Shown here: in pieces, positions 15,210 to 37,198 of the stretch
How positions within the stretch are numbered: position 1 is the first letter of the stretch
Layout: each line of letters begins with the position of its first letter
NCBI GenBank assembly: GCA_965240325.2
Contig: OZ251227.1
Coordinates: 1,612,001 to 1,676,000, forward strand
Source: Rebecca billardiae RCC1528
Taxonomy: Eukaryota; Protista; Haptophyta
Length of the DNA: 64,000 nt
Direction of reading: 5' to 3'
Position numbers and translations under genes: made by a program
The notes under the pieces: generated by a model
Seen by the model: the letters and a program-made list of their open reading frames with translations, nothing else
What the model was told of the DNA's origin: nothing
The model's database searches: none

Positions 15210-15478
15210 GAGTGCCGTTCTCCCCGGCGAACGAGCAGTGGTGCTGCGCGCGACAGGCTCACCGGTCGCGCAGGATTTGAACCTGCACCGGTGGTGCTGC
15301 ACGGGCTCCGAGCGGCCGGTGCGGCGGTGCCTTGCCGGGCGGCCCGGATCGAGAGCTGGTACTATTTTGGATCGGCCCCGCCGGACTTTTTTCGCTTGCT
15401 GTTGCGGGCGCGCGGGACGGAGAGGCGGGCAGCGGTGACGAGCGAGCGCAGGCCTCGTCGAAGGCGCCGGCCGTCGTG

Positions 15479-17439
15479 ATGAGCGACGATGGCATCACGG
15501 GAGCTGGCGGCGCGGGCTCGGCGGAAGCGGAGGAGGGCGCGCCGGCGCCGGCCAGTGTGCCGGACGACTTCTTCGCCAACCCATTCGCTGACCCGTCCGC
15601 CGGCTTCGACGTCAACCCGTTCGACGCAGCCGGCGGCGGCGGCGGCGACGGTAGCGGCGCAGGGGGGTTCGATGCCTCGCCGCCGGCCGCGCCGCCGCTC
15701 GAGCTCTTCGGCGCGGCGGAGGCGGATCCGGTGGGGTGGGCGGCATCGTCACCCCCCGCCGAGACGGAGGAGCTGCGCGCCGAGCTCGAGCGCGCGCACG
15801 CCGAGCTCGCCGCCGCGCGCGCCGCGCGCGCCGAGCTCGACGCCGAGCGCGAGCAGCTGGCATCCGCGCGCGCCGAGCTGGAGGCGCTGAGGGCGCGGCA
15901 CGCGGCGACGGAGTCGGAGCTGGAGGCAGCCCGGGCCGCAGCCTCCGAGCCGCCCGCGATCGACGAGTCGCGCTACGTGCCGCGCGACGAGCTCGCGGCC
16001 GAGCGCGAGCGGCATGCGTCTGCGCGCGCCCAGCTCGATGCGCTGCGCGCGCGGCACGCGGCGACGACCGCGGCGGTGGACGAGGCGCGGTACGTCGCGC
16101 GCGAGGAGCTAGAGGCGACGCTACACGAGATGACGTCGCGCGCCTCCGAGCTCGAGGCCACCTTCGGCGCGCTCCAGGCCGAGTGCCTCCGCGTGCAGGC
16201 CGAGCGCGATGAGCTGGACGGACTGCTGAGCGAGGCGCGCGCGCACGCGGCGCGGGGGGAGCAGGGCGGCGAGGCGGGCGGCGCGCTGGGGGCGGAGCTC
16301 GCGGCTGAGCTCGCCGTCGCGCGCTCCGAGCGCGACGCCGAGCGCGCCGACGCCGACGCGCTCCGCGCGGAGCTCGCCGACGCGCGGCGCGAGCACGCGG
16401 CTGCGCTCGGCGCCCGCGAGCGCGCGGCGCGCGAGGCGGCGGAGGGCGCGGAGGGCGCGCGTTCTGAGAACGAGGCGCTGCGCGACGCGGCGGAGCGGAG
16501 CGCCGAGTTCGCGCGGGCGGCGCACGACGAGGCGGTCGTGCTCGGCGCCGCGGTCGAGGCGCTCTCCGCCGAGGTTGAGCAGCTCAGGGCCGCCGACCCG
16601 TCGGAGGGCGGGCGGAACGCTGCGGAGGCGGAGGAGGCGGCCGCGGACGCGGAGGCGGCGCGCGCCGAGGCGGCCGCGGCGGCGGAGGCGGCGCAGAGGC
16701 GAGCGGCGGCGGCCGAGGCGCGCGCCGCGGCGGCCGAGGCGCGCGCCGCCGAGCTCTCCGCACAGCTCGACGCCTCAGCCGCCGCCGCGCCCGTCGAGGC
16801 GACCGCGGCCGCGTGCGCTGGGCCGGGCGGCGGCGCGGCCTCCGTCGCCGCGCCCGCCGCCGAGCTGCTCGCCGCGCGCGCCGAGGCGGAGGCGCTGCGC
16901 GCGCAGCTCGACGCCTCAGACGCGACGCACGCGCGCGCGCTCGCCGCGCTCCGCGCCGTCGCGCTGCAGAGCTCAGAGCGAGCGGCGGAGGCGGAGGGCG
17001 TGGCCGCGGGCGCGCTCGCGCGCGCCGAGGCGGCGTTGGCTGACGCGGCCGCGGGCGGCGAGGCGGGGGGCGCGGCGACGACGGCGGCGCTCGCCGAGCT
17101 GCGCGCCATCGCCGAGGCGAGTAGCACGCGCGCCGCCGAGGCACACTCGGACCTGCACGCCGCGGCCGCGCCCAACGGCGCTGAGCCCGCCGCGGCCGCG
17201 CCGCCTCCGGGCGCCGGCGCGGCCGCGCCGGGCGCGGGCGCCGCCGCTGCCGCGCTGCGAGACGCGCTGGTCGCCGAGCTGCACGCGCAGCTGGACGAGC
17301 AGACGGCGGCGCACGCGCGCGCGCTGGGCGAGATGCGCGCGCTCGCCGAGGCGGCCAACGAGCGCGCGGCGGAGGCGGAGGGCGCCCTCGAGCGGCGGCT
17401 TGCGCTCGGCGGCGGCGGCGGCGGCGGCGGCGCGGGCGC

Positions 17440-17471
<32 letters not shown>

Positions 17472-17478
17472 CGGGCGC

Positions 17479-17518
<40 letters not shown>

Positions 17519-20365
17519 GCGGCGGCTTTGCACGAGCAGCTCGCCGTGCTGCGCGCGCAGCTCGAGGCGCAGGCGAGCGCGCACAGCGCCGCGCTCGCCG
17601 AGGTGCGCGCCTCCGCCGCCGACGCCGCCGCCGAGCGCGCGACGCGCGAGGGGTTGGCACAACTCGAGGCGGCGCGCGGCGCGGCCGCGGCAGAGGCGGC
17701 GGCGGCGGAGGCGGCGCGCGAGGCAGTGCAGCAGCAGCTGGACGACGCGGCGGTGATGCACGACGCCGCGCTGGGCGAGGCGCGCGCGCGCGCGCACGCG
17801 GCCGAGGCGCACGCGGCCGAGTCCGAGGCGCGCGCCGCCGCCGCGCTCGACGGCGCGAGGCGCGAGGCGGCCGCTGCGGAGGGCCTGAGGCAGCAGCTGC
17901 GCGCGCTCGGCGGCGGCGGCGGCGCGGACGGCGGCGGCGGCGGCGCGGACGGCGGCGGCGGGCGCGGCGGCGCGCTCGCCGAGGCGCGCTCGCCGCCCAC
18001 CGGCGGTGCGCGGCCGGCGGGCAGCCCCCTGCCCCCGTCGACGCCCTCCTCCGAGGTGCGCTCCGCGCTCGGCGCCTCCGAGGAGCGCGCGCGCAGGGCG
18101 GAGGAGGCGGCGGCGCGCGCGGCCGCGAGCGCGGACCGAGCGCGCGCCGCCGAGGCGGATGCGGTGGCCGCGGCGCGCGCCGAGGCGGCGGACGCGGCGG
18201 AGGCGCGCGCCGCGCTCGCGGCGACGCAGCGCGCGCTCGCCGAGACGTCCGACGCGCTGCGCGCGTGCACGCGCAGCGCCGCCTCCGCCGCCTCCGCCGC
18301 CGGCGCCACAGCCATGCCCGGCGGCGCGGCGCGGCACGGCGGCGCGCCGCCCGCGCCGAGGAGCGACGAGGGCGCGCGCGGCCCGGCGGCGGAGGCGGAG
18401 GCGGCGGAGGCGGCACGCGTGCGGGCGCAGGCGCGCGCGCTCGAGGCGGCGGGCACGGAGCACGCGCGGCGGCTGCAGCGGCTGTGCGACACCCTCGTCG
18501 CCTACGCCGCCGGCGCCACCGCCGTCTCCGCCGCCGCCGAAGCGCCGCGCCCCGCCGCCGAGCCGGCATCGACGCCGCCTCCGCCGCCGGCGCTCGCGGG
18601 CGCGCGCGGCGGCGCGGCGGACGCGCCGCCCTCGCCGTCGGCCGGCGCGCTGCTTGGCGCCTCCGCCGCCGCCGCCCTGAGCTCGGTGGAGGACCTGTGC
18701 GACGCGATCGCGCAGCGCGCGGCGCAGGCGCACGCCGCCGCGCGCGCCGCCGAGGCGCGCGCCCTCTCCGCGCGCGCCGACGCGGCGGACGCGGAGGCGC
18801 GCGCACACGCGGCCGACGCGCGCGCTCGGGACGCGCACGCCGCCGCCGCGCTCGAGCTCGGCTCAGCGGCGGCGCGGCGTGGGGAGCACGGCTTCGGCGG
18901 CACGGCGTACGCGCCGCGCCGCGCCGCGCGCACGCCCTCGCCCGACCGCTCCGACGCGCGCGCCGCCGACAGCCTCCGCCTCGAGCTGGCGGAGACACGC
19001 ACCGCCCTCGCCCGCTCGCGCGCCGAGGCGCAAGAGTTGCGCTCGGCGCTGGCGGGCGCGGACTCGACGCGCGCGCAGCTGCGCTCGGCGCAGACCGAGC
19101 TGCCCACGCTGCGCGCGGAGGTGGCGCGCGCGCGCGCGGACGAGGGCAGCGCGCGGCGCCAGCTCGCCGAGGCCTCCGCCGAGCTCACCGCCGTGCGCGC
19201 GATGAACGAACAGCTGCGCGCGCAACTGGACGCCAGGCTGCGCGCGGACGGTGCGGCGGCGCGCGCCGCCGCCGCCGCGAGCGCGGCGCCGCCGCACGCG
19301 CGCGCGGGCGCCGCGCTCAAGACGCCGACGCTCTCGGGCGCGGGCGCGGGCGCGGGCGTCTCCGCGGCGGCCGACGCCCGCGCCCCGAGCACGCCGCCGC
19401 CGTACGCCCTCCGCCTCAGCCCGGGCGCGGGCAGCGGCGGCGCGCAATCTCGCGAGCGCGAGATTGCAGAGGCGCGGCGCGAGGCGGCGGCACACGCAGA
19501 GGTGGCGGCGCGGCTGAGGCTCGAGCTCGACCTCTCGCGCGCGGCGGCGATGGAGGGGCGCGCGGCGCGCGCGGGCGGCGCGCGGGGCTCGCCGCTCGGC
19601 CTCGGCTACGGCTGCGCGGGGGCAGCCGGCTCGCCCGGCGGCGGCGCCAACGGCTGGGGCGGCGGCGCGGGCGGCGCGGCCGAGGGCGCGGGCGCGGGCG
19701 CGCTCCGCGGCGGCGGCGGCGGCGCGCGCGCGTCCCCGCCCTCGCCCGCCACGGCGGCGGCGGCGGCGGCGGCGGAGAGCGAGCGCAACCAGCTCGCAGC
19801 AGAGCTGATCGCGACGCAGCGGCAGCTCGCCGCGGCCGAGGCGCGCGCCGCCCGCCTCGCCCTCGCCGAGCACGAGCGCACAGGACTGCTGCTGCACGCC
19901 GCACCGCCCGGCGGAGGCGCGGCGGGCGCGCGCTATTTCGCAGCGTCGCCGCCGGGGGTGGCCGCCGGCGCGCCCGCCGCGTCCGAGCTCGCCGAGCTGC
20001 GCGCCTCGCATGCCGCGCTGCGCGCGCGCGCCGCCCTCTCCGACGCGCGCGTCGCCGAGCTCGCCGGCGAGAACGAGGCGCTGCGCGCGCGCGCGGGCGG
20101 TCACGCGCCACAGCCGCACCGCCGCTGCTGGCCGGACGAGCGCTACGAGCAGCACTCGTCTTACTCCAGCGGCGGCGGGGCGCCGCTCGGGTTTGGCGGC
20201 GCGGGATACGCGCCGGGCGCCGAGCGGCGCAGCCCCGCCTCTGCGCGCTCGAGCGGCGCGCATCAGCAGCCGCCGCTGCCGCGCGCCGCGTGCTCGCCGC
20301 ACGCCGCCGCCGGCTCGCCGATGCCGCCACACCCGGGCGGGCCGCTGCCGTCCGGGATGCTGTGA
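15479..20365 (+). CDS. Large Ala/Glu/Arg-rich coiled-coil protein
   Basis: About 1630-codon open frame with heptad-like ELxxLRAxL segments; N-terminal NPF motifs (FANPFAD, DVNPFD). Confidence 0.75.
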
Positions 20366-28447: not shown

Positions 28448-29257
28448 TCATGGCGTCAGCATGCGAAGCAAGTCCGAGCGAAGCGTCGCGTCCGACTGGA
28501 AGACGCCGTGCAGCGCGCGCGTCGTCGTGCGCGCACCCGGCTGCTGCACACCGCGCATGGACATGCACATGTGTGCGCACTCGACGATCACGGCGACGCC
28601 CTTGGGCGCGAGGTGCTCCATGAGCGCGGTGGCGACCTGCACCGGCCGTCCAACGAGGGGATGCGGTGTGAGGGGGCGGATGGCCTGCGCCGTGTACGCG
28701 CGCGCGCGCACACGCACCTGCTCTGTCAACCTCTCCTGCACCTGCAGCCTGCGTGCGTACATACCCACCAGCCGGCCGAGCTTGGACAGGCCGATCACCT
28801 TCCCGTCGGGCACGTAAGCGACGTGCGCCTTACCGTAGAACGGGAGCATGTGATGCTCGCACAGCGAGTGCACGCCGATGTCGCGCACAATGACCATGTC
28901 GCCGCACCGATCCTCGTTAAAGATGGCATCGCCGATCACGTCGGCGGGGGACAAGAGGTAGCCGGCCGTGCAGTCGAGGAGGGCCTTCGACATGCGCGCC
29001 GGGGTGTCGACGAGGCCCTCGCGCTCCGGGTCCTCGCCGAGGCACTCAAGCAGCGTGCGCACCGCCGCCTCCATCCGCTCGCGCTTCCGCTTTTTCGCGA
29101 TGCCGGCTGAGCCAGCGTTGGCGTCCTGGTCGTCGCGGCTGTGCACTGCATTGACAACCTCGTCAGACGCGTACAGTACGTCGACAGGCCGCTTTGCGCT
29201 CGGGCTAGGCGAGTCCGCCCGCTTGCCCTCGGCCTCCAGCGTGTCCTCGGCGATCAT
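28448..29257 (-). CDS. GCH1: GTP cyclohydrolase I; in-frame intron 28637-28717
   Basis: [40 protein letters not shown] and HMCMSMRGV; zinc ligands intact. Confidence 0.97.
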
Positions 29258-29549
29258 CTCCGCCGTTGAATGGGTGTGGGGACGTGGCCGTGCGACGCCC
29301 TCAGTTGGCCGGGGCAGCTGACGAACGCAGCTCGCGCGCCTCAAATAATTCGATCGATGAATACGGGGCGGGATCCGGCTCTATCTGCTGAAGATCCCGG
29401 TCCGGTCCGGGGGGCGGGGGAAGCATTTGCGCTCGCCAGGGAGCCACCCTGGCGAGCGCCGCCCAGTGAGCCTCGCCGTCGCCGTCGGGCAAGTGTCGTG
29501 GCTCCGGCGGAAGGAGGTTAGACGGCGAGCCCCGCGCGCTGCAGTGGCT

Positions 29550-30839
29550 ATGACTGGTCAGCGAGCCGTGACCGTCGTGGCGGTGCTGGTCCTGTCGGTC
29601 GCACGGGCGCACCCGGACTACATCGACACGTCCCTCTGCGGCGAGGCGGCGCACCCGGACGGGCCCCACAAGGGACACGGCGCCCCGGTGCTTGACAGAG
29701 ACCTCAGCCTCCGCTTCTTCTGGGCAACACCAGACAATTCTGTGGCCCTTGACGATGCCACCGAGTACCCCGCCTACGACGAGTGGGTGGCACAGAACGG
29801 TCACCTCGAGCTGCCGCCGGGCGCGTTTGCCCCTGGCGAGCGCCTGGTGGCCCTCCTCGCCTGCGGGGGCGGGCGCACGTGCCAGGTGCTCATGACAGCC
29901 ACGGCGGGTGCGTTTGAAGACCGCGGGATCAATAACGACGGGGACGCGCAGCAAGACGCGGCAGTTCGCTGCAGCGGGCGCCGTGTGGACGTCCGCGGAG
30001 CCAATTTGGCCTACCACCCCCTCGTGTGGACTGCCCCGGCAGCCGGGTCGGGCCCCGTGGCATTCGGCGTGACCGCCGCCGCGTCCCAGTCCTCCTCCTA
30101 TCTCCGCCTCACGCCTTCCCACGTCGTTGCCGCAAACGCGTCTCTGGCGCGGCCCGGGGGGGCACCTGCAGGTCCGCCCGCACCCCGGGAGAAGCGGATG
30201 GCCCTCGTGCTCGTGCTCCACGGCTGGTTTGCGGCGCTTGCCTTCGCCGTCGCCTTTCCCCTCGCGGCCGCCCTTGCGTGGGCCACGCGCCCACTCCGGA
30301 GAGGGCGGTCAGCCACGGCTGCGCAGCCAGAGCCTTCCCACGCTCCTGTTGGCGCACTCGCGGGGTTGGCCTCCAAGCGCGTGTCGGCACACAAGCGACT
30401 CGCCTACACTGGGGCAGTGCTCGCAGCCGTGGCCTTCGTCCTCGTCTTCGCCTACAACAGCGCCCCGGGCTTGGACCACTTCTGGGACTCCCACAGCCAT
30501 TGGGGCATCGCTGCCCTCATCCTTGCAGCGAATCAAGTGCAGGGGGGGCTCCTGCGCCCACCAAATGCGGGCGCGGGCGAGAGGCCTTCGAGCGAGCGCC
30601 TGCGGTGGCGCGCCGTCCACGGCATTGCGGGGCTCCTCACCCTCACTGCCGGTGTCGTGGCCACGTGGAAGGGTCTGAATGACGCGGCTCACGAGGGCGC
30701 CGTTGCGGGCGCGCTGCTCGCGCGGATCGTGACGACGGTGTGGCTGTGTATTCTCATCATGGCTGTTCTTGCAGGGGAGGTGCGCCGGCGATTCGCTACC
30801 GAGGCTGTGCTTGAGACGGGGGCTGCCGCCGAGAAATGA
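29550..30839 (+). CDS. Signal peptide + Reeler-like domain + cytochrome b561 domain (ferric-chelate-reductase-like)
   Basis: Four heme-ligand-type His in TM helices (LHGW, AHKRL, HSHWG, VHGIAG), QVQGGLLRP and RLRWRAVH; WTAPAAGSGPVAF is Reeler-like. Confidence 0.8.
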   Translation: MTGQRAVTVVAVLVLSVARAHPDYIDTSLCGEAAHPDGPHKGHGAPVLDRDLSLRFFWATPDNSVALDDATEYPAYDEWVAQNGHLELPPGAFAPGERLVALLACGGGRTCQVLMTATAGAFEDRGINNDGDAQQDAAVRCSGRRVDVRGANLAYHPLVWTAPAAGSGPVAFGVTAAASQSSSYLRLTPSHVVAANASLARPGGAPAGPPAPREKRMALVLVLHGWFAALAFAVAFPLAAALAWATRPLRRGRSATAAQPEPSHAPVGALAGLASKRVSAHKRLAYTGAVLAAVAFVLVFAYNSAPGLDHFWDSHSHWGIAALILAANQVQGGLLRPPNAGAGERPSSERLRWRAVHGIAGLLTLTAGVVATWKGLNDAAHEGAVAGALLARIVTTVWLCILIMAVLAGEVRRRFATEAVLETGAAAEK

Positions 30840-31334: not shown

Positions 31335-32816
31335 CTAGTACTTGCGTCGCACTGCGTCCGCCACGCGTAACACGTCCACCATCTCCTTCACATCGTGAAC
31401 GCGGTGAATGTCCACAGCTGGGACACAACACGCTGTGGCAGCCGCGGTTGCCCATACGCGATCTGCAGCTGTCGGGGCGTGCACGATATCCTCATCGCTC
31501 ACGGGCCACAGGCCTGTCGCGCTGTGCTGGAGCACACCGCCGAGCCAGGCCTTGCGCGACAGCCCCATGAGCACCGGCAGGTCTCCCAGCCCCGCGCGCA
31601 CCACATCCAGGTGCTGCAAGACGGCCAAGTTATCCGCAGGGGACTTGCTGATACCGAGCCCAGGGTCCATGACCACGTCGAAGCGGGGCAGCCCTGCGGC
31701 GAGGGCGAGCTGGGTCTGCGCTCCGAGCTCAGCCACCACAGCTTCTGCCACGCCCCCAGGCCAGCGCGAGAAGTCCCCCTGCCCTGAGCCCAACCCTTTG
31801 CGCACCCATGCAGCTTTGGACATGCGTGCGCTGTACTTGCGTGTGCTCTCCTCCATGCAGTGCATGAGGATGAAGGGCACTCCCAGGCGGGTGGCCAATG
31901 GCGCCATGCGCTCGTCGACAGTGCCACCAGATATGTCGTTCACAATGTCTGCACCGGCGGCAACAGCCTCCTCGGCCACCGCGGCGCTGAATGTGTCCAC
32001 GGAGATGGGTACCGAGAGCCCACTCGCTCGCAAGGCACGCACGGCTGGCACGACGCGCGCCATCTCGCGCGCCTCCGCAGCACCAGTCACGCCCGTCGCA
32101 TAGCCTCCAATGTCGATCACGTCGGCCCCTGCCGCCACCATCGCGAGGGCGTGGCGGCTAGCAGCCTCTAGCGCGGCCGCGCTGGGCTCATCCTTCACGT
32201 GTGGCGTATCCGAGTCGGGGGACATGTTCAGGATTCCCATCACGTAACTGCGCGCGCCCCAGGTCCACACCTGCGCGGGCGAGCCCGACAAAGGGCAGGC
32301 CGCGCGCGCGCCAAAGGCACGGGGTAGGGCGGGTACCACCCGCTCGCCTGCGAGCTCAGAAACCGTGCGGCTGGTCGGCGGGAGCCGCAAATCACCCGCC
32401 ACCTCGGCAAGCGCCTGCAGCAGCGCCTGGTGCCTCTCGCCGCCCCGCGGCGCAGGCGCGTCGAGCGCGAGGCCGCCGCCGGCGTAGCTGGCGTCGTCTA
32501 GTGCGACGAGATCGACATCCGTCGCTGTTGTGGAGCTGGGCAGTGCCACCGCCGCTGCTCGAACGCTCGCAGCTACCGCCGTGGCAGCGGCGAGCAGCTC
32601 AACCACGGAGGCACTCGTCTCCACCCCTGCAACTGCGTGAAGCGTCGCGTCAGCCGCGGGAACGCCCCTAGCCTCCGGAGGTGGCGATGGAGAGCATACA
32701 AGCGACGATGTGCGCACGACCCGCCCGACGTTGCCCAGCTCGCGCAGCGCGGCGCGCACGGCTGCGACCCGGTCCCCTGAGCCCGCACGGAGGCCGAACC
32801 ACGCGACGCGCACCAT
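31335..32816 (-). CDS. Divergent HPPK-DHPS (FolK-FolP) fusion
   Basis: YVMGILN, DVIDIGG, ISVDT, IVNDISGG, ILMH, DPGLG, GLSRK and RVHDV; the N-terminal ~160 aa follow the HPPK pattern (GDR..AL..L, SSL, VET...ELL, DVDLV, LAEV). Confidence 0.93.
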   Translation of the reverse strand: MVRVAWFGLRAGSGDRVAAVRAALRELGNVGRVVRTSSLVCSPSPPPEARGVPAADATLHAVAGVETSASVVELLAAATAVAASVRAAAVALPSSTTATDVDLVALDDASYAGGGLALDAPAPRGGERHQALLQALAEVAGDLRLPPTSRTVSELAGERVVPALPRAFGARAACPLSGSPAQVWTWGARSYVMGILNMSPDSDTPHVKDEPSAAALEAASRHALAMVAAGADVIDIGGYATGVTGAAEAREMARVVPAVRALRASGLSVPISVDTFSAAVAEEAVAAGADIVNDISGGTVDERMAPLATRLGVPFILMHCMEESTRKYSARMSKAAWVRKGLGSGQGDFSRWPGGVAEAVVAELGAQTQLALAAGLPRFDVVMDPGLGISKSPADNLAVLQHLDVVRAGLGDLPVLMGLSRKAWLGGVLQHSATGLWPVSDEDIVHAPTAADRVWATAAATACCVPAVDIHRVHDVKEMVDVLRVADAVRRKY

Positions 32817-32891
32817 GCTGCACGTAACCTGGAGGTCCGGGCCGGTTGCTGGAGCTCCTGACCTCCCCTGTCCTGACCAATCGTACCATAA

Positions 32892-33504
32892 TGTATGGAG
32901 CGCTCGTTGGAACTTGAGCGGGGGTGGAACTTGACATCGCATTTCCCAGCGAAGTGCCCCATCTCGGCGGGGCTGGCACGGTCGGCACACGCTCCTGAGC
33001 GCTCGCTTTGCGGTGCGGCAGGCCTTGGACAGCCCAGACAGACATGCCGCGACCGAATTACCGGGCCATGCGCGCACCACACCCGCGCTACATGGCCTAC
33101 GCGCTGGACGACTGAGAGGCAACGCCGAACCACTGCATTCCACTGCCCCGCATGCACCCCGAGTCACCTTCAGAGCGCGTCGACGAGCGCAGAGCGGGTG
33201 CGTGGGAGTTCGACCAACTCGTGTACCTTCTTGCAAGCACCAGCGGCGAGGTCGCAAGCCGAACCTTGACCAGCCGTGGAACTTGAGCTGGTCGGCAGCA
33301 AAACCACCGTTCAACCCGGATCAAGTTAGCAGCGTGCGAGGAGGAGGCGCGGTGCGCGTCCGCGGCTGGCGAGAGGCGTCCGGACCGTGCCGTTCTCGGC
33401 CGCGCCCGCGCGCTTCCCGCCGCCGCGGGCCCCGTGTACGCCCGTCGTCGCCCTCGCCGCGCGGGCGCCAAACCGGCGTCAAGTTCCAACGAGCGCTCCA
33501 TACA
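32892..33504. mobile_element. MITE-like element with 26-bp perfect inverted repeat
   Basis: TGTATGGAGCGCTCGTTGGAACTTGA (32892-32917) is the reverse complement of 33479-33504; extra GGAACTTGA motifs lie inside. Confidence 0.75.
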
Positions 33505-36583: not shown

Positions 36584-37198
36584 ATGGCGTCGCCCAAATT
36601 CGACGTCGTCTTGGCGTGCTGCCGCAAAACTCTCATGATCGGAAGATGCGGGAAGCTGCCATGGCCGCGCCTGCAACTTGATTACCACTTCTACCATCAG
36701 CTTGTGAGCTCCACGCGCGACCCGCTCAAGCGTAACGCCATGATCATGGGTACGCGCACATTCAGCAACATGCAGAAATACAGCCCCTGGGCGTTCGACC
36801 TGGGCCTCCTAGCCCTCCCTGTGGTCCTCACCCGCCGTCCGGAAGCGGATGCCCGGGCGCTCTTCAAGATACCCAAGGACGTGCTTGTTGCTGAATCTCT
36901 CGAACACGCGATGCAGCTCGTGGCAACGGACGAGGTTGTCGGTGACGTGGCCGTCGAGAAGGCATATGTTCTTGGGGGAGCTGCGCTGTATGCGGAAGCC
37001 CTCGCATCGGACAGGCTCGAGCGCGCGTATGTGACGTGGGTCGATCTGCTACATGAGGAACGCACCCCTGATGACTTGTGCCTTCCTGCTGGTTGCTTTG
37101 ATCAACTCGTGTTGGATCCGCAATGTTCCCGTGCAGGGAAGGTTCACACGAGCTCACATGGGATTGGTTTTGAGTTCAACACGTTTGTCCGAGGATGA
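36584..37198 (+). CDS. DHFR: Divergent monofunctional dihydrofolate reductase
   Basis: IGRCGKLPWPRLQLD, DPLKRNAMIMGTRTF, VLTR, SLEHA, VLGGAALYAEAL, YVT and GIGFEFNTFVR; stop codon with no thymidylate synthase domain following. Confidence 0.92.
   Translation: MASPKFDVVLACCRKTLMIGRCGKLPWPRLQLDYHFYHQLVSSTRDPLKRNAMIMGTRTFSNMQKYSPWAFDLGLLALPVVLTRRPEADARALFKIPKDVLVAESLEHAMQLVATDEVVGDVAVEKAYVLGGAALYAEALASDRLERAYVTWVDLLHEERTPDDLCLPAGCFDQLVLDPQCSRAGKVHTSSHGIGFEFNTFVRG

What the first reader, a model, noticed from the sequence alone, without database searches (positions are those of the whole stretch)
31335..32260. DHPS domain with intact pterin pocket but replaced pABA pocket
Compared by eye with E. 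coli FolP. Kept: N22 (GILN), D96 (SVDT), N115 (VND), M139, D185 (DPG), K221 (SRK), R255/H257 (RVH). Changed: loop 1 PDSFSDGG to PDSDTPHV (F28 and D30 lost), loop 2 GESTRPG to GYATGVT (R63 and P64 lost, loop shortened), F190 to I (DPGLGISK), S222 to A (SRKA). F28, P64, F190 and S222 are established pABA/sulfonamide contacts. There are also insertions after LMH and after SRKAWLG. A coordinated change in an unbroken ORF suggests a new acceptor substrate, or a pterin-binding non-catalytic protein (inference).
Basis: partly seen in the sequence, partly recalled or inferred. Interest (0 to 1): 0.85.

Follow-up and report, generated by a model that had tools for sequence, protein, structure and literature searches.

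The report
Algal DHPS copy without pABA pocket
A haptophyte alga carries a folate-synthesis gene (HPPK-DHPS) whose kinase half is dead and whose synthase half keeps a complete pterin-binding pocket but has lost the pocket for its second substrate, so it probably binds pterins without making the folate precursor.

Summary
The gene (window 31338-32816, minus strand, 493 aa, no stop) is an HPPK-DHPS fusion.

- **DHPS half:** it keeps 36 of the 42 columns that are at least 95% conserved in 383 DHPS domains. All six losses lie in loop 1, loop 2 or at F190 (P = 1.8e-4). These include F28, P64 and F190, the three ring residues that cage pABA. All 30 invariants elsewhere are kept.
- **HPPK half:** it keeps only 9 of 22 invariants and falls below the Pfam and NCBIfam cut-offs.
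- **Relatives:** five Pavlovales haptophytes are nearest (46-49% identical) and all are canonical. No protein seen among the hits shares the derived loops.
- **Rate:** the end branch is about four times longer than its sisters', whereas the neighbouring GCH1 gene evolves at a normal rate.
- **Frame:** at least five lineage-specific indels are all in frame.

**Reading:** a selected, DHPS-derived pterin-binding protein that no longer makes dihydropteroate. A new acceptor substrate is less likely.

S222A means nothing because that site varies. R63 is not universal.

**Unknown:** whether the gene is expressed, and whether a canonical copy exists elsewhere in the genome. The scan's only earlier notes on this lie on this same window.

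The parts
31338..32816 (-). Coding sequence of the HPPK*-DHPS* protein: 493 aa from the ATG at 32816, with the stop at 31335-31337.
   Evidence: ORF list and ATG map. The identical 493-aa protein was called on two DNA contigs of other runs. The AlphaFold2 model has pLDDT 83 and pTM 0.85, and its best fold matches are the bifunctional HPPK-DHPS structures 2bmb and 7mpy.
32337..32816 (-). Degenerate HPPK domain (aa 1-160).
   Evidence: Pfam HPPK scores 20.1 bits, below the gathering score of 25.7, while relatives score 106-129. There is no TIGR01498 hit, while relatives score 94-97 bits. Only 9 of 22 columns at least 95% conserved in 238 HPPK domains are kept. Lost: N>H at 60, E>A at 82, R>A at 87, R>T at 97, H>A at 122, F>A at 131.
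31338..32264 (-). DHPS (Pterin_bind) TIM-barrel domain (aa 185-493) with an intact pterin pocket and partial anion site.
   Evidence: The equivalents of N22, D96, N115, D185, K221, R255 and H257 are all kept. 30 of 30 family invariants outside loops 1 and 2 and F190 are kept.
32181..32219 (-). Remodelled loop 1 (aa 200-212, PDSDTPHVKDEPS). F28 and S29 are lost, G31 and G32 are replaced, and there are 4 extra residues.
   Evidence: F28 is F in 263 of 267 relatives.
32079..32108 (-). Remodelled loop 2 (aa 237-246, GGYATGVTGA). S61 becomes A, R63 and P64 are deleted, and T62 is kept.
   Evidence: P64 is P in 267 of 267 relatives and S61 is S in 265 of 267.
31650..31652 (-). Codon of I389, the F190 equivalent (DPGLGISK).
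   Evidence: F in 267 of 267 relatives and in 383 of 383 DHPS domains.
31761..31859 (-). Lengthened variable loop after LMH (aa 320-352).
   Evidence: It has 5 extra residues next to LMH that no haptophyte relative has. Model confidence here is low (pLDDT 48-59).
31470..31511 (-). 14-residue insertion after SRKAWLGGVLQ (about aa 436-449).
   Evidence: unique to this protein. Cutting it out raises the profile score by about 20 bits simply because an insert is removed. No candidate excision restores loops 1 or 2.
28451..29257 (-). Neighbouring GTP cyclohydrolase I gene. Catalytic motifs are intact and it holds a predicted in-frame 81-nt GT-AG intron at 28637-28717.
   Evidence: Pfam 224 bits, DNA read, and a tree with a normal branch length of 0.36.
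29427..30839 (+). Cytochrome b561-domain membrane protein lying between GCH1 and the DHPS* gene.
   Evidence: Pfam PF03188, 33.5 bits. A 429-aa gene was called on the DNA contigs L007 and L008.
36584..37198 (+). Stand-alone, weak DHFR-like gene, head-to-head with DHPS* across 3.7 kb.
   Evidence: Pfam DHFR_1, 35.5 bits. In the alignments to solved DHFRs, the stretch opposite the conserved 'RPL.GR' segment has no matching arginines, while the acidic residue and the GG motif are kept.

Best explanation
**What it is**
- The gene encodes a lineage-specific, fast-evolving descendant of the haptophyte bifunctional HPPK-DHPS.
- Selection still keeps it, but it no longer makes dihydropteroate.

**Shown by the sequence**
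- The protein keeps the two-domain fold.
- The DHPS barrel keeps every family-invariant residue outside loops 1 and 2 and F190. These include the pterin contacts (D96, N115, D185, K221) and the anion-site residues (N22, R255, H257).
- The three ring residues that cage pABA (F28, P64, F190) are gone, as are S61 and R63.
- The HPPK active site is gone.

**Inferred mechanism**
- The barrel still binds a reduced 6-substituted pterin, possibly one carrying a phosphate or pyrophosphate.
- Loops 1 and 2 can no longer close into a pABA pocket.
- The fused kinase cannot supply the pyrophosphate donor.
- The protein therefore acts as a pterin-binding pseudoenzyme that holds, senses or hands over a pterin.

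**Possible pathway context**
- It sits beside an intact GCH1 and a DHFR-like gene that has lost its folate-tail contacts.
- This suggests a role in unconjugated pterin metabolism rather than folate synthesis. This last step is speculative.
For: - **Selective retention:** the DHPS half keeps 36 of 42 invariants. All six losses lie in loop 1, loop 2 or F190 (P = 1.8e-4), and 30 of 30 are kept elsewhere.
- **Domain contrast:** HPPK keeps 9 of 22 invariants, about the same rate as at variable columns. Fisher test against DHPS gives p = 4e-4.
- **Role of the lost residues:** the pABA pocket is formed by Phe17, Pro53, Phe172 and Lys203 of S. aureus DHPS, whose three rings pack against pABA (PMC6057106). 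By the motifs in the alignment, I read these as F28, P64, F190 and K221 of E. coli.
- **Frame kept open:** at least five indels unique to this protein (+1, +4, -2, +5 and +14 aa) are all in frame across 493 open codons.
- **Gene-specific acceleration:** the end branch is 1.74 against about 0.45 for five canonical Pavlovales sisters, with the clade supported 100/98. The neighbouring GCH1 takes the same sister position with a normal branch of 0.36.
- **Unique derived state:** all close relatives are canonical, and none of the 267 relatives screened shares the derived loops. These came from the listed best hits of a word-indexed search of 5.8 billion clusters and an exhaustive search of 1.84 billion representatives.
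- **Precedent:** actinobacterial FolP2 is a DHPS homologue that does not complement folP and is regarded as non-functional as a DHPS (PMC1971073; PMC7058287).
Against: - There is no evidence of expression. No RNA run holds the gene. The two contigs that carry it come from DNA runs.
- No second species carries the derived form. Conservation of the new loops and dN/dS therefore cannot be measured.
- Ligand binding is inferred from residues alone.
- Loops are the parts of any barrel that tolerate change best, so some of the clustering could reflect tolerance rather than design.
- The protein still passes the TIGR01496 equivalog cut-off (185 against 162.6 bits).
- It is unknown whether a canonical copy exists elsewhere in the genome.
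- The AlphaFold2 model leans on an alignment of canonical relatives and is not independent evidence of folding.
Confidence: 0.55

Rival explanations
1. Decaying relic. The lineage takes up folate, or has another source of it. The HPPK-DHPS gene is under relaxed selection and on its way to becoming a pseudogene. The pattern seen is an early stage of decay.
For: - The HPPK active site is destroyed, which alone would stop the canonical pathway.
- The branch is four times longer than its sisters'.
- There is no expression evidence.
- The derived form is known from one genome only.
- Loops are where relaxed proteins change first.
Against: - 30 of 30 DHPS invariants outside the loops are kept, including ligand-contact residues that folding does not need. 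HPPK keeps only 41% of its invariants.
- At least five unique indels are all in frame, and 493 codons stay open.
- Whole-gene neutral decay should hit both domains alike, and it should produce frameshifts.
Confidence: 0.2
2. Still a transferase, but with a new acceptor. The barrel binds an activated hydroxymethyl-dihydropterin made by a separate kinase. It couples this to a nucleophile other than pABA. The neighbouring DHFR-like enzyme then reduces the product.
For: - The pterin pocket and the anion-site residues N22, R255 and H257, plus T62, are kept.
- The pABA cage is replaced rather than merely deleted. Loop 1 gains four residues with charged side chains, and F190 becomes a smaller hydrophobic residue.
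- The gene is clustered with GCH1 and a DHFR-like gene that lacks its folate-tail contacts.
- From my own knowledge, not checked here: DHPS homologues with another acceptor exist in archaeal methanopterin synthesis.
Against: - The fused HPPK cannot make the donor, and no other HPPK is known in this genome.
- Loop 2 has lost R63 and P64 and is two residues shorter. This loop helps to hold the leaving pyrophosphate (PMC6057106).
- No second sequence shows that the new loops are conserved.
Confidence: 0.15
3. An ordinary, working DHPS whose loops are simply unusual. HPPK activity is supplied from elsewhere.
For: - It passes the TIGR01496 equivalog cut-off.
- T62 and K221 are kept.
- R63 is not universal, being A in 13 fungal enzymes.
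Against: - F28, P64 and F190 are F, P and F in 263, 267 and 267 of 267 relatives, and all three are lost here.
- The profile score is about 85 bits below that of the close relatives.
Confidence: 0.07

Closest known systems
Canonical bifunctional HPPK-DHPS of haptophytes and other eukaryotes (Diacronema lutheri KAG8461670; structures 2bmb of yeast and 7mpy of Arabidopsis)
   Same: - Same two-domain order, fold and descent.
- The gene is sister to five Pavlovales sequences (support 100/98).
- The pterin pocket is identical.
   Different: - The HPPK catalytic residues are lost.
- The pABA cage (F28, P64, F190) and S61/R63 are lost.
- Loop 1 is lengthened and loop 2 shortened, and there are two extra insertions.
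- The branch is four times longer.
- The neighbours differ: three Pavlovales have a Na/Ca exchanger gene downstream, and this locus does not.
FolP2 (Rv1207, PDB 2vp8), the second DHPS homologue of actinobacteria
   Same: - It is a DHPS-fold protein that does not work as a DHPS.
- It does not complement folP, it sits away from the folate genes, and it is still kept in genomes (PMC1971073; PMC7058287).
   Different: - Its origin is independent. This protein scores 81 bits against 2vp8 but 122 bits against B. anthracis DHPS.
- This one is eukaryotic and fused to a dead HPPK.
- FolP2 coexists with an active FolP1. That is not known here.
- I did not compare the residue changes of FolP2 site by site.
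Other Pterin_bind (PF00809) proteins that bind a pterin or folate without using pABA (methyltetrahydrofolate:corrinoid methyltransferases)
   Same: The same TIM barrel, in which the conserved Asp/Asn/Asp pocket holds the pterin ring. No pABA pocket is needed.
   Different: Only a marginal profile match (NF005719, 23.7 bits against a cut-off of 259). By descent this protein is clearly a DHPS.
Sulfonamide-resistant DHPS variants (Sul1-4) and loop 1/loop 2 resistance mutants
   Same: The changes sit in the same loops that shape the pABA and sulfonamide pocket (PMC6057106).
   Different: - Those enzymes keep the pABA cage and remain active.
- Scores to the Sul models are far below their cut-offs (125 against 600 bits and lower).
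- Here the cage residues themselves are removed.

Membership tests
Dihydropteroate synthase (EC 2.5.1.15; PF00809, TIGR01496) | Pterin_bind TIM-barrel domain scoring above the curated cut-offs | tested here: met
   Pfam scores 179.2 bits against 25.5. TIGR01496 scores 185.4 against 162.6, while close relatives score 268-272. The best fold matches are DHPS structures.
Dihydropteroate synthase (EC 2.5.1.15; PF00809, TIGR01496) | Pterin-pocket residues D96, N115, D185 and K221 (E. coli numbering) | tested here: met
   All four are kept.
Dihydropteroate synthase (EC 2.5.1.15; PF00809, TIGR01496) | Pyrophosphate/anion site: N22, R255, H257 and loop 2 T62/R63 | tested here: inconclusive
   N22, R255, H257 and T62 are kept. 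R63 is deleted, but R63 is A in 13 of 267 relatives.
Dihydropteroate synthase (EC 2.5.1.15; PF00809, TIGR01496) | pABA pocket: ring residues F28, P64 and F190, with K221 | tested here: not met
   F28 is replaced, P64 is deleted and F190 becomes I. Only K221 is kept. The three are conserved in 263, 267 and 267 of 267 relatives. The pocket definition comes from PMC6057106.
Dihydropteroate synthase (EC 2.5.1.15; PF00809, TIGR01496) | Condenses DHPPP with pABA | not testable with these tools
   Needs an enzyme assay or complementation.
HPPK (EC 2.7.6.3; PF01288, TIGR01498) | Profile score above the curated cut-off | tested here: not met
   Pfam scores 20.1 against 25.7, while relatives score 106-129. 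There is no TIGR01498 hit, while relatives score 94-97 against a cut-off of 54.1.
HPPK (EC 2.7.6.3; PF01288, TIGR01498) | Family-invariant catalytic and substrate-binding residues | tested here: not met
   9 of 22 columns at least 95% conserved are kept. The fully invariant N, E, R, R, H and F are all replaced.
FolP2-type inactive DHPS paralogues | Specific sequence kinship with actinobacterial FolP2 | tested here: not met
   2vp8 scores 81 bits, below ordinary DHPS at 122 bits. The tree places the protein within haptophyte HPPK-DHPS.
FolP2-type inactive DHPS paralogues | Coexists with an active DHPS in the same genome | not testable with these tools
   Only this window can be read. No Pavlovales-type full-length second copy turned up among proteins called on this organism's DNA-run contigs, but short or split genes would be missed.
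Pseudoenzyme (a folded homologue kept by selection without the ancestral catalysis) | Loss of residues needed for the ancestral reaction, together with evidence of continued purifying selection | tested here: inconclusive
   The loss is shown. Selection is inferred from 30 of 30 invariants kept and the in-frame indels. There is no dN/dS and no expression data.

The most novel reading that the evidence does not exclude
GCH1, the cytochrome b561 protein, HPPK*-DHPS* and the DHFR-like gene form a eukaryotic metabolic gene cluster for a non-folate pterin. In this reading, DHPS* either couples an activated pterin to a new acceptor or carries the pterin between enzymes, and the DHFR-like enzyme, which has lost its contacts to the folate tail, reduces it. 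Both enzymes would have shed their recognition of the pABA-glutamate part in step with each other.
Probability: 0.12. Interest if true: 0.85.

Novelty: new variant of a known kind. Interest (0 to 1): 0.55.

Why it matters
- DHPS is the sulfonamide target and one of the best-understood enzymes of folate synthesis. This natural variant removes exactly the pABA cage, keeps every pterin contact, and sits next to a dead HPPK. It is a clean natural experiment on what the barrel can do without its second substrate.
- It may point to unknown pterin biology in haptophyte algae, especially given the neighbouring GCH1 and altered DHFR-like gene.
- If this is the only copy in the genome, the alga should need external folate. 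That would bear on vitamin exchange in plankton.
- In practice, automatic annotation will call this gene 'dihydropteroate synthase', because it passes TIGR01496. Metabolic reconstructions would then wrongly credit the organism with folate synthesis.

Tried and rejected
1. **Transcript evidence, withdrawn.** I first took the two 1.7-kb Logan contigs L005 and L006 for mRNA, because they are colinear and share the same start at 32920. I rejected this. The same two runs give 6.6-kb contigs that span three genes and include the unspliced GCH1 intron, so they are DNA runs. The shared contig end fits a break at a repeat.
2. **Hidden introns.** I asked whether the odd loops or insertions could be unrecognised in-frame introns, as in GCH1. 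I tested 1,230 in-frame GT/GC-AG excisions of 30-240 nt against a profile of canonical haptophyte proteins. The best gains come only from cutting the 14-residue insert, and none restores loop 1 or loop 2.
3. **Sequencing runs.** Only two weak holders were found, and neither is on record as RNA. One holds a 151-nt identical piece. A sediment metagenome holds a 173-nt piece with 7 differences. This is too little for any test of selection.
4. **Closer orthologues.** None was found above 49% identity in the word-indexed search, the exhaustive search or the JGI metagenome contigs.
5. **Sul-type resistance enzyme or FolP2 kin.** Rejected on scores.
6. **P0003 as a second copy from the same organism.** Rejected. 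A GCH1 from the same run is only 63% identical to the window's GCH1.
7. **Earlier scan notes.** Searches by sequence and by words gave nothing on a second HPPK-DHPS or on other folate genes in this genome.

Full report
**1. What is at the coordinates**

The minus-strand ORF 31335-33314 holds a 493-codon gene from the ATG at 32816 to the stop at 31335-31337. Pfam finds a full Pterin_bind domain (179 bits). The HPPK match is only sub-threshold, at 20.1 bits against a gathering score of 25.7.

Solved DHPS structures match at up to 2e-34. An AlphaFold2 model (pLDDT 83, pTM 0.85) is most like the bifunctional HPPK-DHPS structures 2bmb and 7mpy. The model rests on an alignment of canonical relatives, so it shows compatibility with the fold and nothing more.

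**2. Check of the observation**

I fetched the real E. coli folP from NC_000913 and aligned it with the protein and its relatives.

| Group | Residues (E. coli numbering) | State here |
|---|---|---|
| Pterin pocket | D96, N115, D185, K221 | kept |
| Anion site | N22, R255, H257, T62 | kept |
| Loop 1 | F28, S29, G31, G32 | replaced, with 4 extra residues |
| Loop 2 | S61 | A |
| Loop 2 | R63, P64 | deleted |
| Barrel wall | F190 | I |

In 267 relatives, F28 is F in 263, S61 is S in 265, P64 is P in 267 and F190 is F in 267.

A paper on S. aureus DHPS states that Phe17, Pro53, Phe172 and Lys203 form the pABA pocket. The three rings pack edge-to-face on pABA. Loops 1 and 2 order only in the near-transition state, and the loop 2 Thr bridges the pABA amine and the pyrophosphate (PMC6057106). 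By the motifs in the alignment, I read these as F28, P64, F190, K221 and T62 of E. coli. All three ring residues of the cage are therefore gone.

- S222 is a variable site. It is R in the nearest relatives and A in 10 others.
- R63 is A in 13 fungal enzymes.
- The fate of D30 depends on the alignment.

**3. Is the pattern more than chance?**

- Among 383 DHPS domains, 42 columns are at least 95% conserved, and the protein keeps 36 of them.
- The six losses (T24S, F28, S29, S61, P64, F190) all lie among the 12 invariants of loop 1, loop 2 and F190. Hypergeometric P = 1.8e-4. All 30 invariants elsewhere are kept.
- The HPPK half keeps only 9 of 22 such columns. The fully invariant N, E, R, R, H and F are all replaced. 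Fisher test against the DHPS half gives p = 4e-4.
- HPPK has no TIGR01498 hit, while relatives score 94-97 bits.

The two halves are therefore under very different constraint. That does not fit simple decay of the whole gene.

**4. Relatives and rate**

- The nearest proteins are canonical HPPK-DHPS of Pavlovales haptophytes. These are Diacronema lutheri (49%), Pavlovales sp. CCMP2436 (46%) and three unnamed sequences. Prymnesium and Emiliania follow.
- The Pavlovales proteins are 65-76% identical to D. lutheri, and all carry canonical loops.
- In a maximum-likelihood tree, the window's protein is sister to these five, with the clade supported 100/98. Its end branch is 1.74, against about 0.45 from the same node to each sister.
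- As a control, the neighbouring GCH1 (spliced by hand) takes the same sister position with an ordinary end branch of 0.36.
- The acceleration therefore belongs to the gene, not to the lineage.
- None of the 267 relatives screened has the same combination of changes, and the JGI metagenome contigs hold nothing closer than 41%. These 267 are the best hits listed by the two large protein searches.

**5. Has the reading frame been kept by selection?**

An open frame alone is weak evidence at 65% G+C. Against ten haptophyte relatives, however, the protein has at least five indels of its own (+1, +4, -2, +5 and +14 residues), and all are in frame. If indels fell in frame by chance one time in three, five in a row would occur about 4 times in 1,000. 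This figure is my own rough estimate.

GCH1 next door has an in-frame 81-nt GT-AG intron that reads like an insertion. I therefore tested every in-frame GT/GC-AG excision of 30-240 nt in this gene. None restores loop 1 or loop 2.

**6. Context**

- The gene lies between an intact GCH1 plus a cytochrome b561-domain protein on one side and a weak stand-alone DHFR-like gene on the other.
- In that DHFR-like gene, the stretch opposite the conserved 'RPL.GR' segment lacks the arginines, while the acidic residue and the GG motif remain.
- Three Pavlovales have a Na/Ca exchanger gene directly downstream of HPPK-DHPS. This locus does not.
- In two relatives, GCH1 is not next to HPPK-DHPS.
- The cluster is therefore particular to this lineage.

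**7. What remains unknown**

- **Expression.** No RNA run holds the gene. The contigs I first took for transcripts come from DNA runs.
- **A second copy.** None appeared among full-length proteins called on this organism's DNA-run contigs. Short or split genes would have been missed, and I could not read the rest of the genome.
- **Earlier scan notes.** All notes on this feature lie on this same window.

**8. Verdict**

My estimates for the four readings are:

| Reading | Probability |
|---|---|
| Selected DHPS-derived pterin-binding protein that has lost dihydropteroate synthesis, fused to a dead HPPK | about 0.55 |
| Early decay | 0.2 |
| Transferase with a new acceptor | 0.15 |
| Ordinary DHPS | 0.07 |

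The closest known analogue in function is actinobacterial FolP2, but the origin here is independent. The feature is a new variant of a known kind, and I rate its interest as moderate.

Noticed in passing
window 28637-28717 (minus strand, inside GCH1 28451-29257): A predicted 81-nt in-frame GT-AG intron (GTGCGT...GTGCAG). It reads as a 27-residue insertion in the ORF translation. Removing it restores the canonical GCH1 sequence around 'LTEQ|VATAL'. Short in-frame introns in this genome can therefore pass for protein insertions.
   Followed up: partly
window 32892-32917 and 33479-33504: A perfect 26-nt inverted repeat brackets 613 bp just upstream of the gene, which looks like a miniature transposon. 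DNA contigs from two independent runs both end at 32920, as expected at the edge of a multi-copy repeat. The window holds only this one pair.
   Followed up: partly
window 36584-37198 (+): A stand-alone DHFR-like gene (Pfam 35.5 bits). It keeps the acidic residue and the GG motif, but the stretch opposite the conserved 'RPL.GR' segment, which holds the folate tail, has no arginines. It lies head-to-head with the DHPS* gene.
   Followed up: partly
L001 2616-3620, L002 2084-3547, L009 11535-13109: In three Pavlovales genomes, a Na/Ca exchanger gene lies directly downstream of canonical HPPK-DHPS on the same strand. This small conserved gene order is absent from the window.
   Followed up: yes
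window 31342-31514: A sediment metagenome run holds a 189-nt contig that matches the 3' end of the gene over 173 nt with 7 differences. A close relative of this organism may therefore live in sediments. Only one difference lies away from the contig ends (a Val to Leu change).
   Followed up: no
window 15332-20365 and 16000-20000: A tract of 84-85% G+C carries a 1677-codon ORF and GCG-rich tandem repeats, for example 39-nt units at 17407-17510. Its nature was not examined.
   Followed up: no
L012 4175-6685 (Pavlovales sp. CCMP2436): A Sel1/zf-MYND gene lies about 3 kb from GCH1 in CCMP2436. An earlier scan note reports a Sel1-MYND gene 3.5 kb before this window's start. This may be a remnant of shared gene order.
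   Followed up: no
window 31338-32816: The protein passes the NCBIfam equivalog model for DHPS (185 against 162.6 bits) despite lacking the pABA cage. Automatic annotation would therefore name it a working dihydropteroate synthase.
   Followed up: yes
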